Both the position numbers and the translations under genes were made by a program. The notes beneath the pieces are model-generated. The model had not been told where the DNA came from and ran no database searches. It worked only from the letters and a program-made list of their open reading frames with translations. From positions 186,001-250,000 of IMG/VR virus record IMGVR_UViG_3300020442_000005: a stretch of 64,000 nt of DNA; one strand, written 5' to 3'. Numbering within the stretch: the stretch's first letter is position 1; each line of letters starts with the position of its first letter. Positions 3 to 22,348 of this stretch are shown here, piece after piece.

Positions 3-1448
3 GATGACCAAGAAGTGTACAAGGTCTATGAAGAAGGTCGTTGGGCTGGCATCTTCCAGTGTACTAACAACGGCGCGCAAAGATTGTTTCAACGAGCAAA
101 GCCAAAATCCATCCTTGATATTGCTGCTTTGACTTCAATCTATCGTCCTGGTCCGCTTGCTATGAGCATTGACAAGAAATACGTTAAGGCCAAAAACAAT
201 CCGGAAGATATCAAATATGATCATCCCATTCTTGAGGAAATACTTTCAGAAACCTATGGAATGCTAGTGTTTCAGGAACAGACAATGGCCATCGTAAATA
301 GGCTTGGCCAAATACCTTTGGATGAGTGTAACTCAATTCGTAAAATGATGAAACCACAGCAGTCCTCTGCAGAAGCAACGCGTAAAGCGAAAGCACTCAA
401 AAGCCGTATTGTTGATGGGTTTATGGCATCCGGACTAGATCCATATCAGGCTGACAAGCTATACGCAAACATTATGAAGTTTACGGCGTATTCTTTCAAC
501 AAGTCTCATGCTGTGGCATACGCTATGGACTCTTACTATTGTGCATGGCTGATGACATACTATGAAGAGGAGTGGCTCTGTGCATATCTAGAATCCATGG
601 AAAAGAATGCAGACAAGCGTAACAAAGCATTCAGTGAAGTAAAAGCCCTGGGGTATGAAATCGTTCCAATCGATATTAATTATGCAACCGATTCTTGGGC
701 TATCTTAGATGGAAAGAAGTTTATGCCTTCGTTCTCGTCTTGTAAAGGTATTGGAGATGCTGCCATTCATGAGATAATTGCTTTGCGTAATAAGCAGAAG
801 GGCAAGCGTTTTTCTACCATCGAGTCTATCATGTACGACAAAGATATGGTTTGGCAGCTTTCCAAGTTTAATAAGAAGGCAATGGAGGCTCTGGTGAATA
901 TTAAGGCCTTCGATTCTATGAATATAGTTGGCTTATCAAGTCGATTTGAGAATTACAATCATATGCGTGAGGCACTCATCCCGGGATGGCAAAAGTGGAA
1001 AAAGCGCCTGAAGAGTGATCCAAAGAGAGGCTATAACGATATGTTAGCGTCAATTGAGTCGACCGCAGGAACACCGGCGTTTACCAGGAAAGAAATCATC
1101 CAGAATGAAATGAATCATTTAGGATCTGTATCTATCGAAACATTGATACCGCCAAGATATATTGCACGATTCAACGAGGAACAATGGTCTCCAGTTGACG
1201 AGTTTGATAACCCTAACAAGCCCTATTGGTTCGTTGTTGTTCAGGCTGTAAAGAAAAAGACAAAGACTGGAAGAAATTATCTTCGATTGAAAATCATGGG
1301 ATCAAACGGAAAACAGTACTGGTGTAATTGCTGGGGCTGGAACGGTGTCGACACTGTGGATCCATACACGGTTTGTGTAGGTTACATTAGTGAAAACTCT
1401 TTTGGTAAGTCTACAAAATGGTCAAAAATGGAAATATTCCTTGGTTGA
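3..1448 (+). CDS. dnaE: DNA polymerase III alpha subunit (DnaE-type), C-terminal part; 5' end lies outside the window
   Basis: Motifs GIFQC, SIYRPGP, ETYGMLVFQEQ, FTAYSFNKSHAVAY, KGIG (HhH) and a C-terminal OB-like region; frame is open from base 3. Confidence 0.93.
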   Translation, partial: DDQEVYKVYEEGRWAGIFQCTNNGAQRLFQRAKPKSILDIAALTSIYRPGPLAMSIDKKYVKAKNNPEDIKYDHPILEEILSETYGMLVFQEQTMAIVNRLGQIPLDECNSIRKMMKPQQSSAEATRKAKALKSRIVDGFMASGLDPYQADKLYANIMKFTAYSFNKSHAVAYAMDSYYCAWLMTYYEEEWLCAYLESMEKNADKRNKAFSEVKALGYEIVPIDINYATDSWAILDGKKFMPSFSSCKGIGDAAIHEIIALRNKQKGKRFSTIESIMYDKDMVWQLSKFNKKAMEALVNIKAFDSMNIVGLSSRFENYNHMREALIPGWQKWKKRLKSDPKRGYNDMLASIESTAGTPAFTRKEIIQNEMNHLGSVSIETLIPPRYIARFNEEQWSPVDEFDNPNKPYWFVVVQAVKKKTKTGRNYLRLKIMGSNGKQYWCNCWGWNGVDTVDPYTVCVGYISENSFGKSTKWSKMEIFLG

Positions 1449-1504: not shown

Positions 1505-2194
1505 TTGATGAAAACAGTATCTGATGTACGCAATATGTTTGCGCAAAAATACCTCAACAATGAATTTGTTGTCGACAAGTCTGGTTGCAAAATGCTTGAA
1601 GTGCTTGGTGTATCTTTCATTGCTGATGATGAAACCATATTTGGAAAAGTAAACTATGCGTACATTAAGAAAGAACTAGACTGGTATTTAAGTCAATCTC
1701 TCAATGTTTATAACATACCTGATACCCCTACAATCTGGAAGCAAGTTGCGACAGCTGAAGGCCAGATTAATTCCAACTACGGATATCTTATATTTTCTGA
1801 CGTCAATGGCCATCAATACGATTATGCCTTGAAGGCTTTGCTAGCTGATGAAAACACACGTCGTGCTTGCATGATTTACACTCGGCCTTCTATTCAAACT
1901 GAATACAACACGGCTGACATGTCAGATTTTATTTGCACCAATGCGGTAACTTACTTCATAAGAGATAATCGATTGAGCTGTGTTGTGCAGATGCGTTCGA
2001 ATGATATATGGGCTGGATACCGAAACGACTATGCGTGGCAGAAATGGGTATTAGAAAAGCTACATTCAGATCTTTTGAATAAATACGATAATTTAGAAAT
2101 CGGCGATATAATCTGGAACGCTTCTTCTCTACACATGTATGAAAGAAACTTTGGGTTAATAAGAAAATTTAATAAAATCGGTCTTTACAAATAG
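1505..2194 (+). CDS. dCMP hydroxymethylase (T4 gp42-like, thymidylate synthase fold)
   Basis: Collinear with T4 gp42 as recalled: FVVDKSG, KELDWY, INSNYG, MIYTRPS, MSDFICTN (catalytic Cys), MRSNDxxxGYRNDYAWQK (Asp where ThyA has Asn), WNASSLHMY. Confidence 0.85.
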   Translation: MMKTVSDVRNMFAQKYLNNEFVVDKSGCKMLEVLGVSFIADDETIFGKVNYAYIKKELDWYLSQSLNVYNIPDTPTIWKQVATAEGQINSNYGYLIFSDVNGHQYDYALKALLADENTRRACMIYTRPSIQTEYNTADMSDFICTNAVTYFIRDNRLSCVVQMRSNDIWAGYRNDYAWQKWVLEKLHSDLLNKYDNLEIGDIIWNASSLHMYERNFGLIRKFNKIGLYK

Positions 2195-2203
2195 GAGAAA
2201 ACT

Positions 2204-2614
2204 ATGTCAAACATATTAAAGGAAGCAGATCAAATCATCAACGAAAGATCTGAAGAAAAAGAACGTCAATACGGCCCTTTCAGCGAAGGTATGAAAAGAG
2301 CGGCTATGATTGCATCAGGTATGACCGGCAGAACTTGGTCAGCCCACGATATGTATATTGCTATGATTGCACTTAAGTTTTCTCGACAATCTTATAACTT
2401 TAAAGAAGATAATCTTCTTGATGCCGTGGCATACATCGGCGCGTGGCAAAATTTTATCGATGAAGAGAGACCAGCTCACGAAGGTCCGGATTCACACGAT
2501 GATATATCAATTTCAAACAACAAAACTCTTCTTACTGAAGATAACAACGAAGCGAGCCCAGATGATCCTAGGGCTCTGCTAAAAGCAATGATTGCAATGG
2601 AAGGAAAAAAATGA
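2204..2614 (+). CDS. DUF6378-like all-alpha protein, possible nucleotide pyrophosphohydrolase
   Basis: ILKEADQII..R...YGPF, ALKFSR and DNLLDAVAY pattern; lies in a nucleotide-metabolism block. Confidence 0.5.
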   Translation: MSNILKEADQIINERSEEKERQYGPFSEGMKRAAMIASGMTGRTWSAHDMYIAMIALKFSRQSYNFKEDNLLDAVAYIGAWQNFIDEERPAHEGPDSHDDISISNNKTLLTEDNNEASPDDPRALLKAMIAMEGKK

Positions 2615-3054
2615 GAATAGCAAAAACAAGAAAAGTAAAAACTCCAACCCGCGGTACCAAAGGCTCGGCTGGTATTGATTTCTATGTTCCAGATAATTAT
2701 CCTGCAGATATAGGACCGATCGACCCAGGGCATGCAGTGTTTGTTCCTTCCGGAATTAGTGCAAAAGTCCCAGATGGCTATGCGCTGATTGCATTTAATA
2801 AATCTGGTGTAGCTCTAAAAAAAGGCCTTACTGTTGGAGCTTGTGTTGTTGATTCCGATTATCAAGGAGAAATCCATCTTCATCTCGTTAATACGTCTAC
2901 CAAACCCGTACACATTGAACCCGGCGAAAAGCTAGTACAGTTCTTGCTTGTACCGGTCGACCATTGTGATATTGAGGTAGTTGACAGAGATACACTTTTC
3001 CAATCTGAGTCTCAGAGAGGCGCCGGCGGATTTGGAAGTACGGGAGTCAAGTAA
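2611..3054 (+). CDS. dut: trimeric dUTPase
   Basis: SAGIDF, NKSG, VVDSDYQGEI, RGAGGFGSTG. Confidence 0.93.
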   Translation: MRIAKTRKVKTPTRGTKGSAGIDFYVPDNYPADIGPIDPGHAVFVPSGISAKVPDGYALIAFNKSGVALKKGLTVGACVVDSDYQGEIHLHLVNTSTKPVHIEPGEKLVQFLLVPVDHCDIEVVDRDTLFQSESQRGAGGFGSTGVK

Positions 3055-4044
3055 ATGGATAAGGTGATAGTAACCGGTGGTGCCGGATTTATCGGACACC
3101 ACTTAGTAAAAAAACTAGTATCATTGGGCAAATTCGTATATGTAGTAGATGATCAAAGTTCAGCAGTAGTCAATCCATTAACGACGCCGCCTGATACACA
3201 TGTACGTGAAGTGCTACCTCAGATGCTAGAATTTTATAATGTCGATACAGACCCAGCTAATCCTGGAGTCGTGTATTTAAATTGCGATTATTCTAGTTTA
3301 GCAATCCTAAAATTAATTTATACTGGTCAAATTAAGACTGTGTTTCATTTAGCTGCAAAACCTCGAGTTGAATGGTCAGTCCAACATCCGGTTGTGTCGA
3401 CTACGGAAAACTTTGCAAAAGTTTTGCCTCTATTAAAAGCATGTGCAGCCAAAAACACGAGATTTGTATTTAGTTCAACCGCTGCTGTTTATGGAGATGT
3501 AAAAACACTACCGACTCTGGAAGGCGACAACACGAATCCTAAAAGTCCATATGGGCTGGCAAAACTATGTGTTGAGCAATACATGGATTTATTCAATGAA
3601 TTATACGATCTAGATTATGCTGCTCTACGTTACTTCAATGTTTACGGGCCAGGGCAGCCCGGCGACAGTCCTTATTCGACAGTTGTGTCAGCTTGGTGTG
3701 CTAAGGCTCTTGCCGGAGAAGCATTAAGATCTGATGGCGATGGAGAACAGACCAGAGACATGGTTTATGTAGACGATGTGGTGTCAGCCAATATCTTGGT
3801 AAGTGAAATCACAGATCTACCACATAGAGTGTTTAACGTTGGTAGTGGGCAAAGCGTATCAAACAATTACATCAGGCAAAAATTTGTCGACAAAGGTCAC
3901 AGTAAGGTGAAACATGCAGATGCTCGGCCTGGTGATGTACGAGATACTTTGGCCGGTATTGAAAAATTAGAAAGTCTTGGTTGGAAAGCTGAAACTGCTT
4001 TCGATGCTGGACTACAGAAAGTTTTCGATTATTGGAATATTTAA
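3055..4044 (+). CDS. NAD-dependent NDP-sugar epimerase/dehydratase (extended SDR)
   Basis: TGGAGFIG, FSSTAAVYG, YGLAK (YxxxK), LRYFNVYGP. Confidence 0.9.
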   Translation: MDKVIVTGGAGFIGHHLVKKLVSLGKFVYVVDDQSSAVVNPLTTPPDTHVREVLPQMLEFYNVDTDPANPGVVYLNCDYSSLAILKLIYTGQIKTVFHLAAKPRVEWSVQHPVVSTTENFAKVLPLLKACAAKNTRFVFSSTAAVYGDVKTLPTLEGDNTNPKSPYGLAKLCVEQYMDLFNELYDLDYAALRYFNVYGPGQPGDSPYSTVVSAWCAKALAGEALRSDGDGEQTRDMVYVDDVVSANILVSEITDLPHRVFNVGSGQSVSNNYIRQKFVDKGHSKVKHADARPGDVRDTLAGIEKLESLGWKAETAFDAGLQKVFDYWNI

Positions 4045-4122
4045 TGAGCTTGGTGTTTTTGTTTAAACACATGCGGTTGAATACTTATACACGTTTCGAA
4101 ACGATACAACGGAGAATACACG

Positions 4123-5004
4123 ATGTTAGAACCATCTTCTATTAATACTGTTATTTATCACGCCAACTGCAACGACGGATTTGGCGCTTGTTATTCTGCT
4201 TGGAAGCTATTGGGTAATCGATGCGAATATATTGCATGCGCGCACGGAGATCCAGCACCTGACGTCACCGGTCGAAGAGTAGCAATTCTTGATTTTTCAT
4301 TTAATAATGCAACGACAAAGGCGATGATAGAGCAGGCGGAATCGTTGATCGTGATCGATCATCACAAGTCGGCTGTTGTTGAGTTGCACGATATATCAAA
4401 TACTATTTTTGATATGAATAAATCCGGGGCAATGCTTGCTTGGGAGTTCTTTCATCCTGGAAAAGAGCCTCCTAAGTTTGTACAATATATCGAAGATCGG
4501 GATTTATGGAAATGGGAACTTCCTTATTCAAAGGAATTCTCAGCAGCGTTTGATATGGTGCCATGGGACTTTCATGAGTATGAAAAGTTTGAAGATGATT
4601 CGGTTTTTGACGATGCTGTAAAGCGTGGATCATATATTTTGGCGTATTCAAAAACCGTCATTAAGAAGATTTGTGATAAAGCGGTTTCCAGAAAGTTTGA
4701 TGATTACGATGTCATGGTTGTAAACTCTTCCCACTGGATGTCTGAGATCGGATCGTCTTTGGCAAAAGACTGTGACTTCGCCATGATATGGTATTATGAC
4801 CATGATGAAAAGAACTACAAGTGTTCATTGCGCGCATTTCACGATACCATCGATGTGAGCGAAATCGCTAAAAAGTTTGGTGGCGGCGGTCATAGAAAGG
4901 CGGCTGGTTTTGTTCTTGCAAAGTCTAAACACCCAGATTCCATATTCATTCAACATGTAGAAGAAGAATCTATTTTGCCCGACGGAGAGTTCGGTGCAGA
5001 CTAG
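4123..5004 (+). CDS. DHH/DHHA1 family phosphoesterase
   Basis: YHxxCxDG, ILDFS, IDHH, DRDLW, GGGGHRKAAGF. Confidence 0.88.
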   Translation: MLEPSSINTVIYHANCNDGFGACYSAWKLLGNRCEYIACAHGDPAPDVTGRRVAILDFSFNNATTKAMIEQAESLIVIDHHKSAVVELHDISNTIFDMNKSGAMLAWEFFHPGKEPPKFVQYIEDRDLWKWELPYSKEFSAAFDMVPWDFHEYEKFEDDSVFDDAVKRGSYILAYSKTVIKKICDKAVSRKFDDYDVMVVNSSHWMSEIGSSLAKDCDFAMIWYYDHDEKNYKCSLRAFHDTIDVSEIAKKFGGGGHRKAAGFVLAKSKHPDSIFIQHVEEESILPDGEFGAD

Positions 5005-5407
5005 ACCTAGCTGGAATAGAATTTGGATGGACTTTGCTGAAACTATATCTCAGCGTAGTTATGATCCTAATTTTAAGGTTGGTTGTTGTATTGTCACAGA
5101 TGATAACTGTCAGGTGCTAGCAATTGGCTACAACGGCAATCATAAGGGCGGACCTAATAAAAGAGAATCAGACACACCAGGGCATTCAGGGTTTATACAC
5201 GCTGAAATTAATGCGTTAATTAAGTTGGACTATAATAATCCAAAATCAAAGAAAATGTATTTGACACTGAGTCCATGTTCGGCTTGTGCAAAGGCCATCA
5301 TCAATGGCGGTATTAATAAAGTTTTTTATAAAGAACAATATCGCTGTACTGCTGGAATCGAGTTACTTCGAGAATGCGGAATTGTTGTCGAGCAGATTAC
5401 AGATTAA
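4994..5407 (+). CDS. dCMP deaminase
   Basis: KVGCCI, GYNG, HAEINAL, PCSACAK zinc motifs. Confidence 0.88.
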   Translation: MQTRPSWNRIWMDFAETISQRSYDPNFKVGCCIVTDDNCQVLAIGYNGNHKGGPNKRESDTPGHSGFIHAEINALIKLDYNNPKSKKMYLTLSPCSACAKAIINGGINKVFYKEQYRCTAGIELLRECGIVVEQITD

Positions 5408-5502: not shown

Positions 5503-7971
5503 ATGTTAATGATTGAAAGCTTGTCACGCGGCGCCATTGCTGACGCTATCTACACACTTGAACAGATCGATAAGATTGGCTCTAGGGCTTTGGCTTTAAA
5601 TGAAGCAATAGACAGTGGCCTTTTAACAGAGTCTCGCCAAAGACTGCTTATGGAAGATTTAGACAAGGCAATGAAAGATCTGCAGACTCAATCACAATCA
5701 AGTTTAGGTAAACTCGATAAGGCAATCGCTTTTATTGAAAACTTTTTAACTATCGGAACACAAGGTAAAGGAGTCGCTATATGGGATCTGATCGCTGAAT
5801 CTTTTGGGGTTGCCAAGGAAAAGGTTAGTGAACTAACAACTATTGATCTGGGTGCAATCGGCAACATGAAGGCCTTCTTTAACGAGGGTGGAAAGTTAGC
5901 CGCAATCATGGATGCTCTTTCGGCTGAAATGAATCTTATGGCAGTCTATATTAAGATTCTATCTGGAGCATTTTCCCAAACTATTCGACAAATGAAAGCG
6001 CTTCCTGCAAATCTTAAAGAAAAAGGCGACAAAAAACTAACTTTGAGAGCTTATCTAGATAGCGACCAAAACCGGTTCTCAGAAGAGGAAAAGGGAAAAA
6101 CAATATCTAGCGGTGATTTTGAGGGCGGCTTACTTGATGTTATGCAGGATATTCAAGCGAAAAACGGTGGTTATACCTGGAGTATCAAGGGAATAAAGAA
6201 CTGGTTTGGTGATAACAAAAAGGGTATGGGTATCGCCGCTCTTGCTGGTGGGATTGGTGCCATAGCCGGTTTGGCAACGGGTGGTTTGGCATTGGGTCCA
6301 TTAGCCGCGCTTGCTGCTAAAGGTGCCGCTGTTGGAGGCGGTCTATTCGGCTTGGGCGGACTCGCAAAGGGTAGAGGCGCTGGTAGTCGAACTCCTAAAA
6401 ACGCTCCAGAAGCATATGAGACTTCAAACGAAGCAATTGCAAAAGCTCTTTTAGATTCAGAGGTTAATAAACTTGAGGCTTTGATACCAGCCTTCGTAAA
6501 AGCTGTTAAGGGAGTTGACCCGGACGAGTTTGCAAAAGCATCAGAAGAGGCAAAAGAAGCATTGCAGTATATTCAGGATGGTATAAGACCTGGAGATCTT
6601 ATTGACGACCACCTTAAGGCAAATCCAAGCGGATCCGAAAAGTTAAAACAACTTCGTGACCTGGACCCGGAAACGACGGAAGCAATTCTAGTTCAAACAT
6701 TAGGAAACGACAACTCAGGCATAGAACAATATAAAAATACAACGATTTATAAAAATCTTGAAATGATCAGGAATGAGTTGGTGAAAGAAGCTGTCGAAGA
6801 GACTGAGGACATTCTTCTCGAAGACGGTGACATGGCTCATGACTTTACTATGATGGATTTATTGTTTGAGGAAAAGAAAGACGGCAAGAAGAAAAAGGGC
6901 AAGGGTAAGAAAAAAGGCAAAGGAAAGGGCAAAGATAAATCCGGGAAATCAGACGATAAGCCTGGGGTTACAAAGCCCGAATACAAAAAAATGAAGGGCA
7001 AAATGCAGGCCAAAGGCGAAAGAAGTTTAGAGAAAGCAGAACGCAAGCCTGACAAAGCCGGCAAGTACTCAAAACAAGTCGACAAATACGAAGACAAGAT
7101 AAACAGGAAAATGGTCAACAAGGACAGGCAACGCAACATCACAGCAATTGCTGATGAGTTTGAAAAGAAGATCATGGCACTTGAGGACGAAAAGGACACT
7201 GGCCGCGAAGATGCCGACACGGAAACTGAAGAGCAAGATGAGGAAAAAGACTCTGGCGTTAAAGCAATGCTTGGCCTGGATGAAAATCCAATAGTGAGAG
7301 ACACGCGCAAAAAAGCAGAGAAGATTGTAGCTAATGTAAAGAAAAAAATCGCCGCCATTGCTGAGAGGCGACAAAGACGAAAACTCCTTGAAATGATCGA
7401 TACTGTGAGTGATGGGACCAATTATTTCACTCTTCCTCCGGAGGACCTCGATGCCATCATCAATGACCTAAAAGATGGTGAAAAGATCAACATTCCAATA
7501 CCGGATGGAACATCACCAGATGTTGTCGAAGACGTTGAAGAAGTCGAGCTCAAGCTCAACGACGCGGTCGATGAACTACAACAGCTGGACAGAGACTCTG
7601 AGATTGACGCAGAAAACGAAAGATTAAGGCAAGAGGAGGATGCTGCTCGGCAGGCTGCTATAGACAAAGCCAATGCCGAACTGGCCCAGGCACTCAAAGA
7701 TTTAGCCGAGAAACAGGCGCAAAGAGCAGAGCAGCAAGAAGAAACCGAAGGTGGCGAAAGCAAAAGATTCGATGGAGATCTTTTCATCAAGGGCAAACCA
7801 TTGTCTAAATATGGAAATTTCTCTAAAGATAATCCACCAACAGGTCAAGGCGCAGCGTATCTACTGTTGCTTTACGGCGACGAAAACTATAGTAAGCTTC
7901 TTGGTGAGTCTAGACAGCTCACAAATGAGTCATATGACCGTAGACTTTTGAGACTTGCAGGTATTAAATAG
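5503..7971 (+). CDS. large hypothetical protein, probable virion/head-internal protein
   Basis: 822-aa ORF with RBS; Gly/Ala hydrophobic segment, Lys-rich and Glu-rich tracts, C-terminal RLLRLAGIK. Confidence 0.7.
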   Translation: MLMIESLSRGAIADAIYTLEQIDKIGSRALALNEAIDSGLLTESRQRLLMEDLDKAMKDLQTQSQSSLGKLDKAIAFIENFLTIGTQGKGVAIWDLIAESFGVAKEKVSELTTIDLGAIGNMKAFFNEGGKLAAIMDALSAEMNLMAVYIKILSGAFSQTIRQMKALPANLKEKGDKKLTLRAYLDSDQNRFSEEEKGKTISSGDFEGGLLDVMQDIQAKNGGYTWSIKGIKNWFGDNKKGMGIAALAGGIGAIAGLATGGLALGPLAALAAKGAAVGGGLFGLGGLAKGRGAGSRTPKNAPEAYETSNEAIAKALLDSEVNKLEALIPAFVKAVKGVDPDEFAKASEEAKEALQYIQDGIRPGDLIDDHLKANPSGSEKLKQLRDLDPETTEAILVQTLGNDNSGIEQYKNTTIYKNLEMIRNELVKEAVEETEDILLEDGDMAHDFTMMDLLFEEKKDGKKKKGKGKKKGKGKGKDKSGKSDDKPGVTKPEYKKMKGKMQAKGERSLEKAERKPDKAGKYSKQVDKYEDKINRKMVNKDRQRNITAIADEFEKKIMALEDEKDTGREDADTETEEQDEEKDSGVKAMLGLDENPIVRDTRKKAEKIVANVKKKIAAIAERRQRRKLLEMIDTVSDGTNYFTLPPEDLDAIINDLKDGEKINIPIPDGTSPDVVEDVEEVELKLNDAVDELQQLDRDSEIDAENERLRQEEDAARQAAIDKANAELAQALKDLAEKQAQRAEQQEETEGGESKRFDGDLFIKGKPLSKYGNFSKDNPPTGQGAAYLLLLYGDENYSKLLGESRQLTNESYDRRLLRLAGIK

Positions 7972-7977
7972 GGGATC

Positions 7978-8427
7978 ATGATGAACGAAAGAAAAGTTAT
8001 TGCAAGAATCCGAAACGCCTACAAAAAACGCCTGACCGAAGCCGTTATTGCTGGCGCGCTTGAAGAAGTTGACATGTTCGACAAACGTGGTAATATGATA
8101 TTGACACCGGATCTCAAGGTTAGACACAAGGCATCCGGATACGAATATACGATCGATCATATAGAAGGCGAAGGAGAGGACGCTGTGGTGTATCTCAGAC
8201 ATCCAGAGGAGCCAAGATTCTCAACTGCTGATGCGGAAACACCTTTAGTTGAAAAAACCAAGCTTCAAATGAAAGGTCTTAACGTTGCAAATATCTCTGG
8301 CGGAGGTATGTCTGACATGCCGGAAGAATTGTCTTTGGAAAAGCCTTCTGATGTAGAGAAAAAGGCACCGGCTTCGTTGTTGTCAATAACAAAGAAAGAG
8401 TTTGAAAACGAATACGAGGTAGAATAA
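7978..8427 (+). CDS. hypothetical protein
   Basis: In-operon ORF; its stop overlaps the next start. Confidence 0.7.
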   Translation: MMNERKVIARIRNAYKKRLTEAVIAGALEEVDMFDKRGNMILTPDLKVRHKASGYEYTIDHIEGEGEDAVVYLRHPEEPRFSTADAETPLVEKTKLQMKGLNVANISGGGMSDMPEELSLEKPSDVEKKAPASLLSITKKEFENEYEVE

Positions 8428-9110
8428 TGGATAAAACTTTGAAAGAAATGATTGCAGAAGATTTAGGACTTAAAAAAGACAAGTCTTTGAACGAATCATA
8501 TGTAACTGCTGCCAAAAAATATGATGTTACTACTGAGCTGCTTTCAAAGAAAAATATTGAGGCGCATAATCAGTTATTGGCTCAATATGTCGACGATCTA
8601 AACACAGTGTCTGCCAAACTTGATACAGTATCACGTGAGGATGCTAACCTAAACCATTCAGAGTTTAGGGGTTTGAAGATCGATGAGACCTATAATTTGA
8701 ATGCTGCCTACTTGCATGCCATGTTTTTCGAAAACATAGGAGACCCAAATTCAACAATCACTATGGATTCAATGACTTTTTTACGGCTAGAAAGAGACTT
8801 TGGTTCTTTCGATGCTTGGCAAAAAGATTTTATCGCATGTGGTCTATCGGCAAGAAACGGCTGGGCTGTAACTGTATACAACGACTTTCTTGGTAGATAC
8901 ATGAACGTTGTGGTTGATCTACATAGTTTAAACGTGCCTTTCTCTTCTAAACCTGTTATCGTATTAGATTGCTGGGAACATAGCTACTATCGTGACTATC
9001 TAAAAGATAGAAAGACATACATATACGCGATGATGAAGGAACTCAATTGGAGCCAGATTGAAAAGCGTGTTAAGATAGCTGAGAAGATAGCAAAAATTAC
9101 CAAAAAATAA
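8427..9110 (+). CDS. Fe/Mn superoxide dismutase-like protein (ChrC-like)
   Basis: LHAMFF, FGSFDAWQKDF, GWAV, LDCWEHSYY. Confidence 0.8.
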   Translation: MDKTLKEMIAEDLGLKKDKSLNESYVTAAKKYDVTTELLSKKNIEAHNQLLAQYVDDLNTVSAKLDTVSREDANLNHSEFRGLKIDETYNLNAAYLHAMFFENIGDPNSTITMDSMTFLRLERDFGSFDAWQKDFIACGLSARNGWAVTVYNDFLGRYMNVVVDLHSLNVPFSSKPVIVLDCWEHSYYRDYLKDRKTYIYAMMKELNWSQIEKRVKIAEKIAKITKK

Positions 9111-12263: not shown

Positions 12264-12624
12264 AAACAAAATGAAGATGGCAGATTTAATGAGTGGTTAT
12301 TTAGATAAAAAAGAGGCCGGAATGCTTACGGAAGCAAAGGTTAGTACATCAAGGCTTCCGGTCACTACTAAAAAATCAATTGATTGGCAAGTTAGAGACG
12401 ATCCGCCTCGATATGTCAAAAAATTTAAGTTTAAATCGCATGAAAATTTTCTAAATTTCATGATTGCAGTTTTTCAGTATGAAAATAGTGTAAAGCACAA
12501 TGCCAAAATAACTGTCGGGTACCCAGAAGTAATTTTCGAGGTTTGGACCCACACTCTCGATGAAATTACGGATATGGATAAAGAGTATTGCAGAGAGGTT
12601 GATCACATATACAGAGAGCTGTAA
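12232..12624 (+). CDS. pterin-4a-carbinolamine dehydratase-like protein (start uncertain)
   Basis: W...KKFKF...F...V......HN.KI....V...VWTH....ITDMD pattern of the PCD/DCoH family. Confidence 0.6.
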   Translation: MKIVTNQLWDKNKMKMADLMSGYLDKKEAGMLTEAKVSTSRLPVTTKKSIDWQVRDDPPRYVKKFKFKSHENFLNFMIAVFQYENSVKHNAKITVGYPEVIFEVWTHTLDEITDMDKEYCREVDHIYREL

Positions 12625-19119: not shown

Positions 19120-20709
19120 ATGCCTGAAGCAGCGAAGAAAAAGTTAATATTTCATGACGAAGCCCGATCTATACTTTTAGACGGAGTGAACAAGTTGGCT
19201 GATGCTGTCAGTGTTACAATGGGTCCGGGTGGTCTTAATGTAGTAATACAAAGAGAGAACTCGGTACCTATTCTAACAAAGGACGGTGTGACTGTTGCAC
19301 GTGCAATTAATTTACCAGATGAAATGGAAAATTTGGGAGTGCAGCTAGTGAAAGAGGCAGCTCAAGGGGCAGCTGATATAGCCGGAGATGGTACAACTAC
19401 ATCGACCGTGTTGGCTCGTGAAATTTTCTCGCTGGGCTTGAGAGCCATGGCCGCTGGAAACAGTTCCGTCGATATTAGGGAAGGCCTGCGCCAAGCCGGC
19501 GAGGAAGCTATCAAGCTGATAAACCAAAACTCGATACCAATTCAGACTGACGAACAAATAAAGCAGGTTGGTACCATATCAGCAAACGGTGAGGAAGAAA
19601 TCGGTCAGTATTTAGCAAACGCAATGTCCGCAGTCGGAAGAGAAGGCATCATTGCAGTTGAAGAAGCGAAGGGCTTTAAAACCAGTCTTGAAAAAGTGTC
19701 AGGTACCAGAATCGACCGAGGATTCGTAAGCCCATATTTTATTAACAATGCAGCGAAAAGTCATTGCGTTCTTAATAAACCAAAGGTACTACTTGCCAAC
19801 AGAAAAATTAGCTCGATGCGTGAACTGTTGCCGTTGTTAGAAGCTGCGCATGAACGTCAGAAACCAATATTGATTATTGCGGATGAAGTGGAAGGCGAGG
19901 CTTTAAACGGACTTGTAGTAAACGCCTCCAATGGAACTATCAAGGTTTGCGTAATCAGACCGCCAGAGTTCGGTCAAAATAGACTAGGTGCAATGGAGGA
20001 TTTGGCAGTCCTTTTGGGAACAAAAGTATATCGATCATCTGATGATCTTGCAACCGTAAATTTTGACACTCTCGGTACCGCAAAAAAGATTACTGTCAAA
20101 AAAACAGAGACAGTTATTCTTGAGCCAGGAGGAGACGAGGTTGAAATAGTCAAACAGAAGGATTCTATCCGTGAAGAACTTGCCACACCTGGACTGGAAA
20201 AATCTCTGAACGACGCCCTGCAACGAAGGTTGTCACGATTGGCAGACGGAATTGCAATTATAAGAGTTGGTGGCGCAACGGAAGCAGAGCTAAGAGAAAG
20301 AAAGGATCGAGTCGAAGACGCTTTACACGCAACGAGAGCCGCTGCAAATAAAGGGATTCTACCGGGTGGAGGAACGGCATTGCTGAGAGTTTCAGAAAAA
20401 ATAAAAGTTCCAGACGATGAACGTCTGCATGCAGGTTTTAGAATAATACAATTGGCCTGTAGAAAACCACTTACTCAAATCGTAAATAATGCTGGAATGG
20501 TACCCGAAGTAATTATTGAAAAGGTGTTGGCATCAGATAACTTTGATTATGGGTATAACGCTAGAACAAACACTTTTGGAGATTTGAAGGAAATGGGAGT
20601 CATTGATCCAACTTTAGTCCTGGTGTCAGCTTTAAGACACAGTGTTTCAGCGGCAGATAATTTGCTCAGCGTAGCCTGTGCAATGCATGATATAGATTCT
20701 AAATTCTAG
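19120..20709 (+). CDS. groEL: group I chaperonin GroEL
   Basis: LADAVSVTMGPGG, TKDGVTVA, AGDGTTT, QVGTISANG, RVEDALHATRAA, PGGG, GVIDP; no GGM tail. Confidence 0.95.
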   Translation: MPEAAKKKLIFHDEARSILLDGVNKLADAVSVTMGPGGLNVVIQRENSVPILTKDGVTVARAINLPDEMENLGVQLVKEAAQGAADIAGDGTTTSTVLAREIFSLGLRAMAAGNSSVDIREGLRQAGEEAIKLINQNSIPIQTDEQIKQVGTISANGEEEIGQYLANAMSAVGREGIIAVEEAKGFKTSLEKVSGTRIDRGFVSPYFINNAAKSHCVLNKPKVLLANRKISSMRELLPLLEAAHERQKPILIIADEVEGEALNGLVVNASNGTIKVCVIRPPEFGQNRLGAMEDLAVLLGTKVYRSSDDLATVNFDTLGTAKKITVKKTETVILEPGGDEVEIVKQKDSIREELATPGLEKSLNDALQRRLSRLADGIAIIRVGGATEAELRERKDRVEDALHATRAAANKGILPGGGTALLRVSEKIKVPDDERLHAGFRIIQLACRKPLTQIVNNAGMVPEVIIEKVLASDNFDYGYNARTNTFGDLKEMGVIDPTLVLVSALRHSVSAADNLLSVACAMHDIDSKF

Positions 20710-20746
20710 AATTTGGAATTTAATATTTTTTTTATTAAAAAACCTG

Positions 20747-20777
20747 TGTACTTTTGTGCACAGGTGATTAAATTATA
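20747..20777 (+). promoter_or_regulatory. promoter TGTACTT-N15-TAAATTATA upstream of the sigma gene
   Basis: Same fixed spacing as the other instances. Confidence 0.6.
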
Positions 20778-20826
20778 GATGATTGCACAAAATGCAATTA
20801 ATACTTAACTTTATTTTGGGGGTCGA

Positions 20827-21528
20827 ATGAGACAAATATCGCACAAACTATTGACAGCTGACGAAGAGAAAGAGTTAGCAAAATTAATCGAAAAGGGAGA
20901 TCGTCGTGCGCGAGACAAAATGATCTGCTGCAATCTCAGATTAGCGCTTTCAATTGCTAACCAGTATAGAAAATCTGGTCTGCCAATGGAGGATATATCA
21001 CAAGAAGCAAATGTTGGTTTGATCAAGGCTGTCGACAGATTCGACTGGAGAAAGGGATTCAAGTTCAGCACATATGCAGTGTGGTGGATTAAACAATCGA
21101 TTAGAAGATATATCTCCTCTCAAGGAACTCACATTAAATTTCCAGCTGGATCTCGTCATACGATATATAAGATCGAAAAGCTGAGAAAAGAATACTTCGA
21201 CGATTTTGGCGTTTATCCAGACGACAAAGAAATTGCAGAAATCATGGGTATGTCGAAAGACGTCGTGTCATCGATTAGGGCTGGAATGCAATGGCCTGTA
21301 AACATCGACCAGCCCATGAAAGGATTTGAGGGTAGAACTTATGCTGAAGTGATCCCTGATGAAGATTCGACTATGCACGAAGAGATGATCGATCGCGATA
21401 CAATTATTAATCTAATCAAAACAGGGTTTAGCTCACTAACTAAACAAGAGGAAATGGTTCTAAGACTACGTTTCGGCATTAAGGAATCCGATACAGATAC
21501 TGAAAAATTTCCTTCAACCAATCAATAA
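20827..21528 (+). CDS. sigma-70 family factor, regions 1.2-4.1 only
   Basis: NLRLALSIA, QEANVGLIKAVDRFD, GFKFSTYAVWWIKQSI; ends soon after VLRLRFGI without the region 4.2 HTH. Confidence 0.9.
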   Translation: MRQISHKLLTADEEKELAKLIEKGDRRARDKMICCNLRLALSIANQYRKSGLPMEDISQEANVGLIKAVDRFDWRKGFKFSTYAVWWIKQSIRRYISSQGTHIKFPAGSRHTIYKIEKLRKEYFDDFGVYPDDKEIAEIMGMSKDVVSSIRAGMQWPVNIDQPMKGFEGRTYAEVIPDEDSTMHEEMIDRDTIINLIKTGFSSLTKQEEMVLRLRFGIKESDTDTEKFPSTNQ

Positions 21529-21547
21529 TTAAACAGGAGAAATATAT

Positions 21548-21820
21548 ATGTCTATGCCAAAAGGATTTAAATCGGAAAATGGTTACGCCACCGTCACAGG
21601 AACAGATGGGTTGGGCTACAGAGAAATTGCAGAAAAAATGACAAGTGATGGTATAAAAATGAATCACGCAACAGCAAGAAATTATTTTATTCGCGCAATG
21701 AAAAAGATCGCGAAACCCCTAGCTGGCCACAGTGAAAGAAGCCCTGATAAGTTAGCAGCAGATCCAGGGTTTCAAGGAGCTGTAGCTACACTCATGAAGG
21801 AAAAGAAACTTGTATTATAA
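21548..21820 (+). CDS. small HTH protein resembling sigma region 4.2
   Basis: YREIAEKM....MNHATARNYFIRAMKKI; own AGGAG RBS. Confidence 0.55.
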   Translation: MSMPKGFKSENGYATVTGTDGLGYREIAEKMTSDGIKMNHATARNYFIRAMKKIAKPLAGHSERSPDKLAADPGFQGAVATLMKEKKLVL

Positions 21821-22097
21821 AATGCTTAAGCTGGAGTTCGCAAACATGGCTGCTCATACAGCCTTGGTTGAAGCCTGTGATTGGGATGAGTCGCAGGCTG
21901 CTTCTGTTATCGAAGTCGTGTCAGAATTTTTAGATCAGTTGAAGCCTGATCGGGATATGAAATGGGAAGATTTTAGGGAACTCATAAGATCTTACATGGC
22001 AAACATATACGGCGAAATAATTTCTGATATAATTATAAACATACTCGAAGCAAAAGCTGATGAAGTAAAATTTTATTCGGAGATTGATAATGATTGA
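21810..22097 (+). CDS. hypothetical protein
   Basis: Overlapping ORF in operon. Confidence 0.6.
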   Translation: MYYKMLKLEFANMAAHTALVEACDWDESQAASVIEVVSEFLDQLKPDRDMKWEDFRELIRSYMANIYGEIISDIIINILEAKADEVKFYSEIDND

Positions 22098-22347
22098 TTG
22101 GGAATTTTATTCAAAAAGAAGAAATATTGACTTAGCCAAATTTATTGTTTTAAACGACGTAGAAACATATGATGCTCTTGTTAGCCTCTTGGCTGCCAAA
22201 GGAGTTAATCCTCCAGAAAAAGGTTTGTTTCAGTCAGCATATGCAGTCGCCTTTCCTCCAATAGCGCCTAAGCCGCGGCGTAAAACAACTAAACGCACGA
22301 CTGGTAAATCAACTAAGAAAACCTCAAAACCTAGAACAAAGAAGTAA
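22084..22347 (+). CDS. hypothetical protein with basic C-terminal tail
   Basis: K/T/R-rich tail. Confidence 0.6.
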   Translation: MIMIDWEFYSKRRNIDLAKFIVLNDVETYDALVSLLAAKGVNPPEKGLFQSAYAVAFPPIAPKPRRKTTKRTTGKSTKKTSKPRTKK

Positions 22348-22348
22348 C

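What the first reader, a model, noticed from the sequence alone, without database searches (positions are those of the whole stretch)
1505..5407. T4 gp42-like dCMP hydroxymethylase locus with a sugar epimerase: candidate cytosine hypermodification pathway
Seen: ORF 1505 keeps gp42 hallmarks (catalytic Cys in DFICT; Asp in GYRNDYAWQ, where dUMP-specific ThyA has Asn). It sits right after dnaE with a DUF6378-like gene, dUTPase, NDP-sugar epimerase, DHH phosphoesterase and dCMP deaminase. Established: gp42 makes hm-dCMP, and T-even phages glycosylate it. Inference: this phage replaces C with a modified, possibly non-glucose glycosylated cytosine, replicated by a DnaE-type (family C) polymerase rather than the family B enzyme of T4. 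No glycosyltransferase is recognisable in this window.
Basis: partly seen in the sequence, partly recalled or inferred. Interest (0 to 1): 0.75.

Follow-up and report, generated by a model that had tools for sequence, protein, structure and literature searches.

The report
T4-type hydroxymethylcytosine synthase, marine jumbo phage
A 273 kb uncultivated marine phage that copies its DNA with a bacterial-type DnaE polymerase carries a true T4-type enzyme for making 5-hydroxymethyl-dCMP, so its DNA probably contains hydroxymethylcytosine, but the usual helper enzymes are missing and any sugar decoration is unproven.

Summary
ORF 1508-2194 is a full-length homolog of T4 gp42 (PDB 1b49, E 4e-70, about 52-55% identity). 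It matches T4 gp42 at all 18 active-site positions checked. These include Cys146, Asp177 (dCMP rather than dUMP), Asp143 (non-methyl product) and Asp169, which rules out the recently described 5-hydroxy-dCMP synthases.

The neighbours are as described: DnaE, DUF6378, dUTPase, a GalE-like UDP-sugar C4-epimerase, a DHH phosphoesterase and a dCMP deaminase. The genome is a closed circle of about 272.9 kb from Tara Oceans. It also encodes ThyX, SHMT, TK and RNR, so dTMP synthesis does not need this enzyme.

hmC synthesis is very likely, and DnaE is the only polymerase found. But the genome has no homolog of T4 gp56 (dCTPase), gp1 (hm-dCMP kinase), alpha-GT or beta-GT.

The sugar link is suggestive only. 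Two distant relatives have a cassette of GT, kinase, epimerase and dCMP hydroxymethylase. This phage lacks that GT and kinase, and other relatives keep the epimerase without a hydroxymethylase.

Two results are new:
- DUF6378 lay next to a dCMP-hydroxymethylase-type gene in 42 of 80 viral loci.
- A conserved nuclease plus two GT-B genes, far from the locus, are the best candidates for DNA glycosyltransferases.

The parts
15..1448 (+). C-terminal 477 aa of a 1201-aa DnaE-type (family C) DNA polymerase alpha subunit. The gene begins upstream of the window, at genome 183843.
   Evidence: PF17657 finger 5.9e-32 and HHH_6. The full gene has PHP, DNA_pol3_alpha, finger and HHH_6 domains. No T4 gp43 homolog is in the genome.
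1508..2194 (+). T4 gp42-type deoxycytidylate 5-hydroxymethyltransferase (5hm-dCMP synthase), 228 aa. An alternative TTG start lies at 1505.
   Evidence: PDB 1b49 E 3.9e-70. 51.5% identity to T4 gp42. Identical to T4 gp42 at 18 of 18 active-site positions, including D143, C146, D169 and D177 in E. coli ThyA numbering. It is the only PF00303 hit in the genome.
2204..2614 (+). DUF6378 protein. A nearly invariant five-helix N-terminal domain (residues 1-88) is followed by a variable, low-confidence (probably disordered) tail with a conserved C-terminal motif. The function is unknown. It resembles Nmad1 and is genomically coupled to dCMP hydroxymethylases.
   Evidence: PF19905 5e-10. Alignments A8 and A11. 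Model pLDDT 92.9. No PDB fold match, but AFDB matches to 'Nucleotide modification associated domain' proteins. A TS homolog lies within 6 kb in 42 of 80 loci, and all 40 classified have D143 and D177 (39 also D169).
2611..3054 (+). Trimeric-type dUTPase. Its start overlaps the DUF6378 stop by 4 nt.
   Evidence: PF00692 5.5e-23. NF001862 104.1 bits, cut-off 103. phrog_135.
3055..4044 (+). Extended-SDR NDP-sugar epimerase of the GalE/WbpP-like UDP-sugar C4-epimerase type. It starts 1 nt after the dUTPase stop.
   Evidence: PF01370 1e-49. The best PDB hits are all UDP-Glc, UDP-GlcNAc or UDP-GlcA 4-epimerases: 6dnt 5e-49, 4zrm 2e-47, 6wjb, MoeE5, WbpP, WbgU. It has GGAGFIG, SSTAAVYG (not the TDE dehydratase motif) and YGLAK. 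The position is conserved in relatives L029, L109, L196, L197, L206, L030 and L119.
4123..5004 (+). DHH/DHHA1 phosphoesterase. It is distantly NrnA-like and is a probable nano-oligonucleotide or pAp phosphoesterase.
   Evidence: phrog_4771 5.7e-80. PF02272 DHHA1 30.9 bits, cut-off 25.9. The DHH and GGGGH motifs are visible in the sequence. NrnA 8iu7 matches only the DHHA1 part. 64-80% identical in relatives.
5027..5407 (+). dCMP deaminase (126 aa from the ATG at 5027; the longest ORF starts at GTG 4994).
   Evidence: PF00383 4.4e-21 and phrog_174 4.9e-43. The public gene call is 126 aa.
8427..9110 (+). Fe/Mn superoxide-dismutase-like protein. It closes the conserved block in all relatives, and a role in the pathway is not implied.
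   Evidence: PF02777 1.4e-20. 51-53% identical and syntenic in L116-L119, and a syntenic Sod_Fe_C gene (Pfam) also follows the block in L030 and L109.

Best explanation
Window 1508-2194 encodes a genuine T4-type dCMP hydroxymethylase inside a co-oriented, tightly packed deoxypyrimidine operon. The gene order is DnaE, hydroxymethylase, DUF6378, dUTPase, UDP-sugar 4-epimerase, DHH phosphoesterase, dCMP deaminase. The host genome is a complete, circularly closing, roughly 272.9 kb marine jumbo phage with a T4-like virion module and a DnaE replicase.

Likely mechanism:
1. dCMP arises from nucleotide turnover. The DHH enzyme may trim short oligonucleotides from host DNA breakdown to mononucleotides (inferred).
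2. The phage SHMT (genome 30197-31357) supplies methylene-tetrahydrofolate.
3. The hydroxymethylase converts dCMP to 5hm-dCMP (shown by sequence signature only).
4. In parallel, dCMP deaminase, dUTPase and ThyX make dTMP, so the TS homolog is free for cytosine modification.
5. 5hm-dCMP is then phosphorylated by an unidentified, possibly host, kinase and incorporated by DnaE, giving hmC-containing phage DNA (inferred).

Complete replacement of C is not assured, because no dCTPase is recognisable.

Glycosylation is possible but unproven. The epimerase would convert a host UDP-sugar to its C4 epimer for a DNA glycosyltransferase. The best candidates are two conserved GT-B enzymes next to a PD-(D/E)XK nuclease at genome 69.2-72.5 kb.
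For: Enzyme identity:
- PDB 1b49 matches at E 3.9e-70 over the full length.
- 18 of 18 active-site positions equal T4 gp42, and all 120 nearest homologs share D143, C146, D169 and D177.
- These residues are the published determinants of dCMP specificity and of a hydroxymethyl rather than hydroxyl product (PMC13326640).

Freedom from a dTMP role:
- ThyX scores 7.5e-46, and the gp42-like gene is the single PF00303 hit in the genome.

One-carbon and nucleotide supply:
- SHMT 6e-136, plus TK and RNR.

Family trait:
- The same block occurs in relatives L029, L109, L196, L197, L200 and L206. The slot after DnaE always holds a TS homolog with the D143/D169/D177 signature, from either of two clades.

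Sugar link:
- L030 and L119 carry GT-B, helicase, Tmk-like kinase, epimerase and dCMP hydroxymethylase together.
- Published phage 5hmC GTs depend on a co-encoded epimerase.
- The epimerase is of the C4-epimerase type.
- The nuclease plus two GT-B trio is conserved and syntenic in complete relatives G006 and G007, whereas an interior GT2 is not.

Genome completeness:
- Sister assemblies run from the record's end into its start, and a 165-bp terminal overlap has 2 mismatches.
Against: - No homolog of T4 gp1 (hm-dCMP kinase), gp56 (dCTPase), alpha-GT or beta-GT exists in the complete genome. T4 cannot make hmC DNA without gp1 (own knowledge).
- The L030/L119-type GT and kinase are absent here and in complete relatives.
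- Relatives L116-118 keep the epimerase, DHH and deaminase without any TS homolog on contigs of 21-91 kb. The epimerase is therefore not strictly tied to hmC.
- The GT-B pair sits at the end of a glycan island, between a 1985-aa fibre protein and the baseplate genes. Iyer et al. 2021 read such islands as surface-glycan systems.
- There are no chemical data. This is an uncultivated metagenomic genome.
Confidence: 0.7

Rival explanations
1. The phage makes plain, unglycosylated and perhaps only partially substituted hmC. The epimerase is unrelated to DNA and serves the phage's virion or host-surface glycan programme, together with the 50-72 kb glycan island.
For: - No known-type DNA GT is present.
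- The epimerase persists in L116-118 without a TS homolog.
- The genome has three more SDR epimerase/dehydratase paralogs and at least seven GTs in an island next to fibre and baseplate genes.
- Jumbo-phage glycan clusters with 1-4 SDR paralogs are interpreted as surface polysaccharide modification (PMC7824862).
- No dCTPase is found, so replacement may be partial.
Against: - This epimerase is not in the glycan island. It sits inside the nucleotide operon, 1 nt after dUTPase, and holds that position across relatives down to 38-43% identity.
- In L030 and L119 it is flanked by a GT-B, a dNMP-kinase-like protein and a dCMP hydroxymethylase.
- 20 of 80 gp42-bearing viral loci have an alpha-GT next to gp42, so glycosylation of hmC is common.
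Confidence: 0.35
2. 5hm-dCMP is made but is not the final DNA base. It is deaminated by the adjacent dCMP deaminase to 5hm-dUMP, giving 5-hydroxymethyluracil in DNA. Alternatively, the enzyme acts mainly as a sink or decoy in the dCMP pool, for example against host nucleotide-depletion defences.
For: - A dCMP deaminase is in the same operon.
- No hm-dCMP kinase or dCTPase is present.
- The deaminase shows some similarity to anti-phage dCTP deaminase models (NF041025, 3e-16, far below cut-off).
Against: - T4 itself pairs gp42 with a dCMP deaminase that feeds dTMP synthesis (own knowledge).
- ThyX is present, so T is made normally.
- No dTMP-eliminating functions were recognised.
- The hydroxymethylase slot is conserved across two enzyme clades, which argues for a structural DNA modification.
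Confidence: 0.08
3. The enzyme is a 5-hydroxy-dCMP synthase like RB69 gp48 or DLP3 gp80. The DNA would then carry O-glycosylated 5-hydroxycytosine, for example arabinosylated.
For: - It belongs to the same superfamily and has Asp at the position of ThyA Asn177.
- RB69-type phages also lack alpha-GT and beta-GT and use unusual sugars (PMC13326640).
- The genome has HAD phosphatase-like, nucleotidyltransferase-like, cupin and class II aldolase genes near SHMT.
Against: - The diagnostic D169N change is absent. Ours reads RSND like T4, and RB69 reads RSQN.
- In the larger alignment, RB69 also differs at positions 58, 80 and 94, where ours equals T4.
- Identity is only about 20% to RB69 gp48 against 52% to T4 gp42.
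- No arabinose-5-phosphate isomerase (SIS) was seen in the Pfam inventory.
Confidence: 0.04
4. The ORF is an ordinary thymidylate synthase making dTMP from dUMP.
For: Pfam, PHROG and many database records name it 'thymidylate synthase'.
Against: - It has Asp instead of Asn177, Asp instead of Leu143 and Thr instead of His147.
- NCBIfam ThyA equivalog scores are 21-42 bits against cut-offs of 108-405.
- ThyX is present.
- It is 52% identical to the biochemically and structurally characterised T4 enzyme.
Confidence: 0.02

Closest known systems
Bacteriophage T4 gp42, deoxycytidylate 5-hydroxymethyltransferase (PDB 1b49/1b5e/6a9b)
   Same: Full-length homology (E 4e-70, about 52-55% identity), the same size class, and identical residues at all 18 active-site positions checked. 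Like T4, the phage also encodes a dCMP deaminase, a recombinase, gp32, and gp20/gp23/gp21-type virion genes.
   Different: The host genome is not a T-even. It has a DnaE replicase instead of gp43, ThyX instead of Td, and a trimeric dUTPase instead of gp56. It has no gp1, alpha-GT or beta-GT. gp42 is far more similar to T4's (52%) than the shared replication genes are (20-25%), which suggests horizontal acquisition. Close relatives carry a different hydroxymethylase clade in the same slot.
5-hydroxy-dCMP synthases (RB69 gp48, DLP3 gp80, Thanatos, RL38J1; Lee et al. NAR 2026, PMC13326640)
   Same: They are thymidylate synthase homologs with Asp at the position of ThyA Asn177 and an acidic residue at position 143. 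They occur in phages lacking T4 glucosyltransferases and using unusual NDP-sugars.
   Different: They carry Asn at the Asp169 position and this protein carries Asp. Identity is about 20%. They have adjacent Tmk-like kinase, GT and arabinose-activation genes that this phage lacks.
Epimerase-dependent 5hmC glycosylation gene clusters of phages ('subclass II' BGCs; bioRxiv 10.1101/2023.12.21.572611)
   Same: A sugar epimerase is encoded beside the 5hmC-forming enzyme. In those systems the epimerase is required for the GT to add Hex, HexNAc or HexA to 5hmC. Relatives L030 and L119 of this phage have GT and epimerase next to a dCMP hydroxymethylase.
   Different: There, 5hmC is made on DNA by a C5-methyltransferase plus a TET-like oxygenase, and the GT is adjacent to the epimerase. 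Here 5hmC would be made at the nucleotide level, and no GT is adjacent.
Nmad1 (PF07659/DUF1599) 'nucleotide modification associated domain 1'
   Same: DUF6378 is a small all-helical phage protein of unknown function. It is structurally similar to proteins so annotated (Foldseek probability 0.96-0.99, TM about 0.6). It has the same kind of neighbourhood, with a thymidylate-synthase-type enzyme and a dUTPase.
   Different: It is a separate Pfam family, and no sequence-level link was shown here. DUF6378 neighbours are specifically dCMP-hydroxymethylase-type enzymes, whereas the cited Nmad1 example sits with ThyX.
Glycan (capsular/O-antigen-like) modification clusters of jumbo cyanophages (Iyer et al. 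2021, PMC7824862)
   Same: The island at genome 50-72.5 kb has the same make-up: several SDR epimerase/dehydratases, many GT families, methyltransferases and an aminotransferase. Cupin isomerase and nucleotidyltransferase genes of the kind Iyer et al. list lie elsewhere in the genome, at about 31-33 kb.
   Different: The epimerase in this finding lies about 117 kb away, inside a nucleotide-metabolism operon. The terminal nuclease plus two GT-B trio is conserved in relatives, unlike an interior GT2.

Membership tests
T4-type dCMP hydroxymethylase (5hm-dCMP synthase) | Thymidylate synthase fold, with full-length similarity to the solved T4 enzyme | tested here: met
   PF00303 45.6 bits over a cut-off of 24.3. 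1b49 E 3.9e-70, residues 4-226 against 7-232.
T4-type dCMP hydroxymethylase (5hm-dCMP synthase) | Catalytic nucleophile Cys (T4 Cys148, ThyA Cys146) | tested here: met
   Cys in MSDFICTN aligns to T4 Cys148.
T4-type dCMP hydroxymethylase (5hm-dCMP synthase) | Asp at the pyrimidine-specificity position (T4 Asp179, ThyA Asn177) | tested here: met
   Asp in YRNDYAWQ. All 120 nearest homologs have Asp.
T4-type dCMP hydroxymethylase (5hm-dCMP synthase) | Acidic residue at ThyA Leu143, which admits water and gives a non-methyl product | tested here: met
   Asp, as in T4 Asp145. The criterion comes from PMC13326640.
T4-type dCMP hydroxymethylase (5hm-dCMP synthase) | Asp retained at ThyA Asp169 (hydroxymethyl rather than hydroxyl product) | tested here: met
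   RSND as in T4. RB69 gp48 has RSQN.
T4-type dCMP hydroxymethylase (5hm-dCMP synthase) | Catalyses dCMP + CH2-THF + H2O to 5hm-dCMP + THF | not testable with these tools
   This needs an enzyme assay or in vivo nucleoside LC-MS.
5-hydroxy-dCMP synthase (RB69 gp48 type) | Asn replacing ThyA Asp169 | tested here: not met
   Asp is present. In the 124-sequence alignment, ours also matches T4 and not RB69 at positions 58, 80 and 94.
Thymidylate synthase ThyA (dUMP methylase) | Asn177, Leu143 and His147, and a score over the equivalog cut-off | tested here: not met
   The residues are Asp, Asp and Thr. NCBIfam ThyA models score 21-42 bits against cut-offs of 108-405.
T-even hmC replacement and glucosylation system | dCTPase/dUTPase gp56 to remove dCTP | tested here: not met
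   No blastp or phmmer hit. Only a trimeric dUTPase is present. DUF6378 is not gp56- or MazG-like.
T-even hmC replacement and glucosylation system | dNMP kinase gp1 that phosphorylates hm-dCMP | tested here: not met
   No hit. The only small N-terminal Walker-A protein with a recognised kinase family is thymidine kinase. No Tmk-like kinase of the L030/L119 type is present.
T-even hmC replacement and glucosylation system | alpha- and/or beta-glucosyltransferase | tested here: not met
   PF09198 and PF11440 give no hit, while positive controls score 2.5e-63 and 2e-166. Custom HMMs and hhalign are also negative.
T-even hmC replacement and glucosylation system | Family B replicative polymerase gp43 | tested here: not met
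   No gp43 homolog. A 1201-aa DnaE is present instead.
Epimerase-dependent 5hmC glycosylation cluster (subclass II) | Sugar epimerase encoded next to its DNA glycosyltransferase | tested here: not met
   No GT Pfam hit at genome 177.5-237.8 kb. ORFans near the locus have no PHROG hit. The feature is met only in relatives L030, L119 and the L080 type.
GalE-like UDP-sugar C4-epimerase (extended SDR) | GxxGxxG NAD motif, Ser/Thr-Tyr-Lys catalytic triad, no TDE dehydratase motif | tested here: met
   GGAGFIG, SSTAAVYG and YGLAK are in the translation. The top PDB hits are all C4-epimerases. The GalE equivalog score of 138 is below its cut-off of 262, so the substrate is undetermined.
DHH/DHHA1 phosphoesterase | DHH motif III and DHHA1 GGGH motif | tested here: met
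   VIDHHKS and GGGGHRKAAG are present. DHHA1 scores 30.9 over a cut-off of 25.9. The DHH domain scores 22 against a cut-off of 28.1. phrog_4771 scores 6e-80.
Nmad1-like domain (for DUF6378) | Homology to PF07659 | tested here: inconclusive
   Only structural similarity to AFDB entries so named was found (probability 0.96-0.99, TM about 0.6). No sequence-profile test against PF07659 was run.

The most novel reading that the evidence does not exclude
A cosmopolitan family of marine jumbo phages, with a T4-like virion and a DnaE replicase, makes C5-modified cytosine DNA by a pathway built differently from T4's. In this reading:
- A dCMP hydroxymethylase, interchangeable between two clades, works with DUF6378, a previously unassigned Nmad1-like protein, as a dedicated pathway component.
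- No gp1-type kinase or gp56-type dCTPase is needed.
- The operon-encoded UDP-sugar 4-epimerase, together with the conserved trio of PD-(D/E)XK nuclease and two GT-B enzymes, installs a non-glucose sugar on hmC.
- Family C polymerases would then be shown to replicate hypermodified-cytosine genomes.
Probability: 0.25. Interest if true: 0.75.

Novelty: new variant of a known kind. Interest (0 to 1): 0.55.

Why it matters
Nucleotide-level synthesis of hydroxymethylcytosine has been studied almost entirely in T-even phages. There it comes with a fixed set of helpers: dCTPase, dNMP kinase, glucosyltransferases and a family B polymerase. This locus places the same key enzyme in a very different and environmentally widespread setting, namely oceanic jumbo phages that replicate with DnaE and use ThyX, and that setting lacks all of those helpers.

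If the DNA really carries hmC or a glycosyl-hmC, three things follow:
- Other proteins must do the phosphorylation, dCTP exclusion and sugar transfer.
- A family C polymerase must accept the modified nucleotide.
- Marine viromes may be biased by modification-sensitive library methods.

The specific coupling of DUF6378 to dCMP hydroxymethylases also gives a testable lead on a large protein family with no known function. More than 2000 marine homologs were found.

Tried and rejected
1. DUF6378 as the missing dCTPase (MazG or gp56-like). It was suggested by acidic EEKE and EDNLLD clusters. It was rejected as unsupported:
   - hhalign against a gp56 alignment gave probability 0.3% twice.
   - There was no PDB profile hit.
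   - Foldseek with a confident model gave a best E of 0.7, and MazG appeared only at rank 49.
   - The first AF2 model, from a shallow alignment, was unusable at pLDDT 52.
2. Search for a cryptic DNA glycosyltransferase.
   - HMMs of 19 alpha-GT homologs, of beta-GT and of the L080-type GT found no hit better than E 0.07 among all ORFs.
   - hhalign of 78 ORFs gave a best probability of 11%. This test has low power, because the phage's own GT-B enzymes did not score either.
   - PHROGs on ten ORFans near the locus gave nothing.
   - Atlas look-alikes identified the 198-aa protein near SHMT as HAD-phosphatase-like. The 258-aa protein stayed an ORFan.
3. megablast of the locus against phage GenBank records found no match.
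4. The first look-up of encoding contigs, using the TTG start, failed. The ATG start at 1508 worked.
5. The single-protein scan for epimerase relatives found only 3 loci. An alignment-based scan was needed.
6. The CheckV figure of 82% completeness was rejected after the record's end was shown to join its start.
7. Iyer et al. 2013, which I recall as defining the Nmad domains, could not be retrieved. What I say about its content rests on my own knowledge and on a secondary citation.

Full report
**1. The observation**

The seven co-oriented ORFs are present exactly as described.

- ORF 1505-2194 begins TTG-ATG. The form found in public gene calls starts at 1508 and is 228 aa. It contains the quoted DFICT and GYRNDYAWQ strings.
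- Pfam places it in PF00303.
- Against all PDB sequences, the best match is T4 deoxycytidylate hydroxymethylase 1b49/1b5e at E 3.9e-70 over the whole length. E. coli ThyA scores about 1e-6.
- tblastn against 50,697 phage records finds 1262 hits. All of the best 40 listed are myoviruses of Enterobacteria and Aeromonas (one is labelled Stenotrophomonas) with genomes of about 160-183 kb, at 53-55% identity, and many are annotated as dCMP hydroxymethylase.

The neighbours are confirmed:
- DnaE, of which the window holds the last 477 of 1201 residues
- DUF6378
- a trimeric dUTPase
- an NAD-dependent epimerase
- a DHH/DHHA1 phosphoesterase
- a dCMP deaminase

Intergenic distances are 10, -4, 0, 78 and -11 nt, and no + strand terminator-like site lies in the block. 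This fits a single transcription unit.

**2. What the genome is**

The window is bases 186001-250000 of a 273,025-bp IMG/VR record. The record is JGI contig Ga0211559_10000001, from a Tara Oceans marine metagenome. The same phage was assembled independently several times, and the locus occurs in at least 20 marine runs from about ten studies.

CheckV rates the record 82% complete and linear. That estimate is too low:
- Three sister assemblies, one of 272,733 bp, run from the record's last genes straight into its first genes.
- The last 165 bp repeat the first 165 bp with two mismatches.

The map therefore closes at about 272.9 kb, and the gene inventory can be treated as complete.

Pfam was run over all ORFs of at least 70 aa (one 5.5-kb ORF at genome 88672-94212 could not be scanned), and precomputed calls were read as well. 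Together they show:
- T4-like virion and recombination genes: gp20 portal, gp23 capsid, gp21 protease, T4-type terminase and baseplate, gp32, a UvsX/RecA-like protein, and an Mre11/Rad50-like pair
- a bacterial-type replication set: DnaE, DnaB and DnaG
- no family A or family B polymerase

T4 gp41, gp61 and UvsX match at only 20-25% identity, against 51.5% for gp42.

**3. Which reaction the TS homolog performs**

A 2026 study (PMC13326640) showed that some gp42-like proteins make 5-hydroxy-dCMP rather than 5-hydroxymethyl-dCMP. These include RB69 gp48, DLP3 gp80, Thanatos and RL38J1. In E. coli ThyA numbering, the determinants it gives are:
- Asn177 changed to Asp for dCMP specificity
- Leu143 changed to Asp or Glu for a non-methyl product
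- Asp169 changed to Asn as the diagnostic for the hydroxylase

I aligned the window protein with E. coli ThyA, T4 gp42, RB69 gp48 and database relatives.

- At all 18 active-site positions examined, the window protein is identical to T4 gp42. These include Glu58, Trp80, Tyr94, Arg126/127, Asp143, Cys146, Thr147, Arg166, Ser167, Asn168, Asp169, Asp177, His207 and Tyr209.
- RB69 gp48 has Asn169 and several other differences.
- All 120 nearest database homologs share Asp143, Cys146, Asp169 and Asp177.

The genome has only this one PF00303 gene. It also has a ThyX (E 7.5e-46) and an SHMT (E 6e-136). dTMP synthesis is therefore covered independently, and the one-carbon donor is supplied by the phage. 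I conclude with about 0.9 confidence that this is a 5hm-dCMP synthase.

**4. What is missing**

In T4, hmC DNA needs gp56 (dCTPase), gp1 (hm-dCMP kinase) and alpha- or beta-glucosyltransferases.

- None has a homolog here by blastp or phmmer.
- Profiles built from 19 alpha-GT homologs, from beta-GT and from another phage GT family find nothing.
- The curated Pfam models PF09198 and PF11440 find nothing, although they hit positive-control phage genomes at 2.5e-63 and 2e-166.
- The only small N-terminal Walker-A protein with a recognised kinase family is thymidine kinase.

The steps after 5hm-dCMP are therefore unassigned. That lowers confidence that C is fully replaced. It does not lower confidence in the enzyme call.

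**5. The epimerase**

Its closest solved relatives are all UDP-sugar C4-epimerases: 6dnt, 4zrm, 6wjb, MoeE5, WbpP and WbgU, at E 5e-49 to 1e-32. It has the NAD motif and the Ser/Thr-Tyr-Lys triad, and it lacks the dehydratase TDE motif. Its substrate cannot be read from sequence.

Comparative context argues both ways.

For a link to hmC:
- The gene keeps its place in the operon in close relatives (L029, L109, L196, L197, L206).
- In two distant relatives the order is GT-B, helicase, Tmk-like kinase, epimerase, dCMP hydroxymethylase, then (with one or two intervening genes in L119) TK, dCMP deaminase and SOD. L030 has a gp42-type enzyme in this position. L119 has a 27%-identical enzyme that still carries Asp143, Asp169 and Asp177.
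- That is a conserved cassette with a non-orthologous swap of the hydroxymethylase.
- T4-like contigs of the L080 type carry gp42, a cytidylyltransferase-like protein, an epimerase and a GT.
- Published work shows phage 5hmC glycosyltransferases that strictly need a co-encoded epimerase.

Against a link:
- The window phage and its complete relatives lack that GT and kinase.
- Contigs L116-118 keep kinase, epimerase, TK, DHH, deaminase and SOD with no TS homolog anywhere on 21-91 kb.

**6. Glycosyltransferases elsewhere**

Genome 50-72.5 kb is a glycan island. It holds three GT2, one GT11 and three GT-B/GT1-like genes, plus three SDRs including a GDP-mannose-dehydratase type. It also holds a sugar dehydrogenase, a DegT aminotransferase, a sulfotransferase, two FkbM methyltransferases and two B12-radical-SAM enzymes. 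The island sits between a 1985-aa fibre protein and the baseplate genes. Iyer et al. 2021 interpret such islands as surface-glycan systems.

The last three genes of the island are a PD-(D/E)XK nuclease, a 433-aa GT-B and a 386-aa GT-B that matches the 'GT4-conflict' model.

- This trio is conserved and syntenic in two complete relatives, at 59/68/52% and 48/62/47% identity.
- An interior GT2 is missing from one of those relatives.

The trio is the best candidate for a DNA-directed glycosylation module. A conserved virion-glycosylation role is equally consistent with its position.

**7. DUF6378**

- The N-terminal 88 residues are almost invariant among more than 2000 marine homologs, and the tail is variable.
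- With a deep alignment the domain models confidently as five helices (pLDDT 92.9).
- It has no significant match among solved structures.
- In AFDB it matches its own family, a fusion with the nucleoside-deoxyribosyltransferase-like DUF4406, and proteins annotated 'Nucleotide modification associated domain'.
- Nmad1 (PF07659) is an uncharacterised phage protein seen with dUTPase and ThyX.

A scan of IMG/VR for DUF6378 gave 80 loci.
- 42 have a TS homolog within 6 kb, often immediately upstream.
- All 40 that could be classified carry Asp143, Cys146 and Asp177, and 39 of the 40 also carry Asp169. Most belong to a clade only about 30% identical to gp42.
- 17 loci also have a gp56 homolog, so DUF6378 does not simply replace gp56.

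This specific coupling to dCMP hydroxymethylases is, to my knowledge, not described. Only three papers mention DUF6378, each only once or twice in the full text.

**8. The DHH protein and the deaminase**

The DHH protein keeps the DHH and GGGGH motifs and is 64-80% identical in relatives. Two readings remain open:
- An NrnA-like enzyme that trims oligonucleotides to dNMPs and so feeds dCMP to the hydroxymethylase and deaminase. This is my inference from the operon context.
- A phosphodiesterase that degrades cyclic-nucleotide defence signals (Iyer et al. 2021).

The deaminase plays the role of T4 Cd.

**9. Verdict**

The inference of hmC in the DNA is reasonable (about 0.7). The inference of a non-glucose glycosyl-hmC fed by the epimerase is plausible but unproven (about 0.35-0.4).

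The system is a new variant of a known kind. It combines the T4 key enzyme with a DnaE/ThyX jumbo-phage background, different accessory genes, and the new lead on DUF6378.

Noticed in passing
window 32496-38784: A complete SAM (activated methyl) cycle is encoded by the phage: SAM synthetase MetK (32496-33500), five-domain B12-dependent methionine synthase MetH (33918-37454, about 1171 aa) and S-adenosylhomocysteine hydrolase (37456-38784). A QueF-like gene (33451-33945) overlaps between them. This suggests heavy SAM-dependent methylation during infection. The genome also has MT-A70, Dam, Methyltransf_23 and two FkbM methyltransferases.
   Followed up: partly
window 38894-41097: A 378-aa ORFan and a 194-aa ORFan flank an HhH-GPD DNA glycosylase (40027-40488), directly after the SAM-cycle genes. 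Neither ORFan has a Pfam or PHROG hit. They could be further DNA-modification or repair functions.
   Followed up: partly
genome 49.9-72.5 kb (outside window; loci L023, L024): A large glycan-biosynthesis island lies between a 1985-aa YadA-head fibre protein and the baseplate genes. It has at least seven glycosyltransferases, three SDR enzymes, a sugar dehydrogenase, a DegT aminotransferase, a sulfotransferase, two FkbM methyltransferases and two B12-radical-SAM enzymes. Its terminal PD-(D/E)XK nuclease plus two GT-B genes are conserved in relatives, whereas an interior GT2 is not.
   Followed up: partly
genome 1-165 and 272861-273025: The record's last 165 bp repeat its first 165 bp with two mismatches, and sister assemblies bridge the ends. 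The 'linear, 82% complete' record is in fact a closed genome of about 272.9 kb. A 401-aa ORF spans the junction.
   Followed up: yes
genome 25.7-34.3 kb (outside window; locus L022): A second nucleotide and sugar locus holds a PMM-like HAD mutase, a class II aldolase/epimerase, NifU, a helicase 41% identical to the one inside the L119 hmC cassette, and SHMT. It also holds a cytidylyltransferase-like protein, a HAD phosphatase-like 198-aa protein (T5 dNMPase-like clusters), a cupin sugar-isomerase-like protein, a 258-aa ORFan and a NUDIX protein. It could be an NDP-sugar activation route or an NAD-salvage set.
   Followed up: partly
loci L196, L197, L200, L206, L244 versus window 1508-2194: In closer relatives of this phage, the gene slot between DnaE and DUF6378 holds a different clade of TS homolog. 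It is about 280-290 aa and about 30% identical to gp42, with the same Asp143/Asp169/Asp177 signature. This is a non-orthologous displacement of one dCMP hydroxymethylase by another.
   Followed up: yes
window 41147-42417: A cluster of six tRNA genes: Leu-TAA, Arg-TCT, Gln-TTG, Thr-TGT, Gly-GCC and Met-CAT.
   Followed up: no
window 19120-22912 and 27203-28141: Host-like auxiliary genes: GroEL/Cpn60 (19120-20709), a sigma-70 region-2 factor (20827-21528), peptide deformylase (22349-22912) and UV-damage endonuclease UvdE (27203-28141). DnaJ (31984-32379) and a pterin-4a-carbinolamine dehydratase (about 12271-12624) are also present.
   Followed up: no
genome 177.5-183.8 kb (just upstream of window; locus L004): Between ThyX and DnaE lie an Fpg/Nei DNA glycosylase, an MT-A70 adenine methyltransferase and ClpS. 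The Fpg and ClpS genes are conserved in the 242-kb relative L109.
   Followed up: no
genome 12.4-15.2 kb and 34.3-38.9 kb (outside window): The phage encodes signalling-type proteins: two HATPase_c proteins (one with PAS domains) and a weak response-regulator hit. It also encodes the bacterial stress trio DUF444 (YeaH-like), SpoVR and the PrkA kinase.
   Followed up: no
window 5503-7971: An 822-aa protein with long Lys/Glu/Asp-rich low-complexity stretches and a Gly/Ala-rich segment has no family hit. It is syntenic in relatives, at 820 aa in a sister assembly and 757 aa in L109, directly after the deaminase.
   Followed up: no
run X4: One small public run labelled with an organism name, not as a metagenome, holds 39% of the sampled words of the locus. 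It could be a single-cell genome and hence a lead to the host.
   Followed up: no
PHROG phrog_474 / phrog_1167: The PHROG families that DUF6378 matches are annotated 'phosphofructokinase'. Nothing in sequence, fold or context supports that name, and it looks like a propagated mis-annotation.
   Followed up: partly
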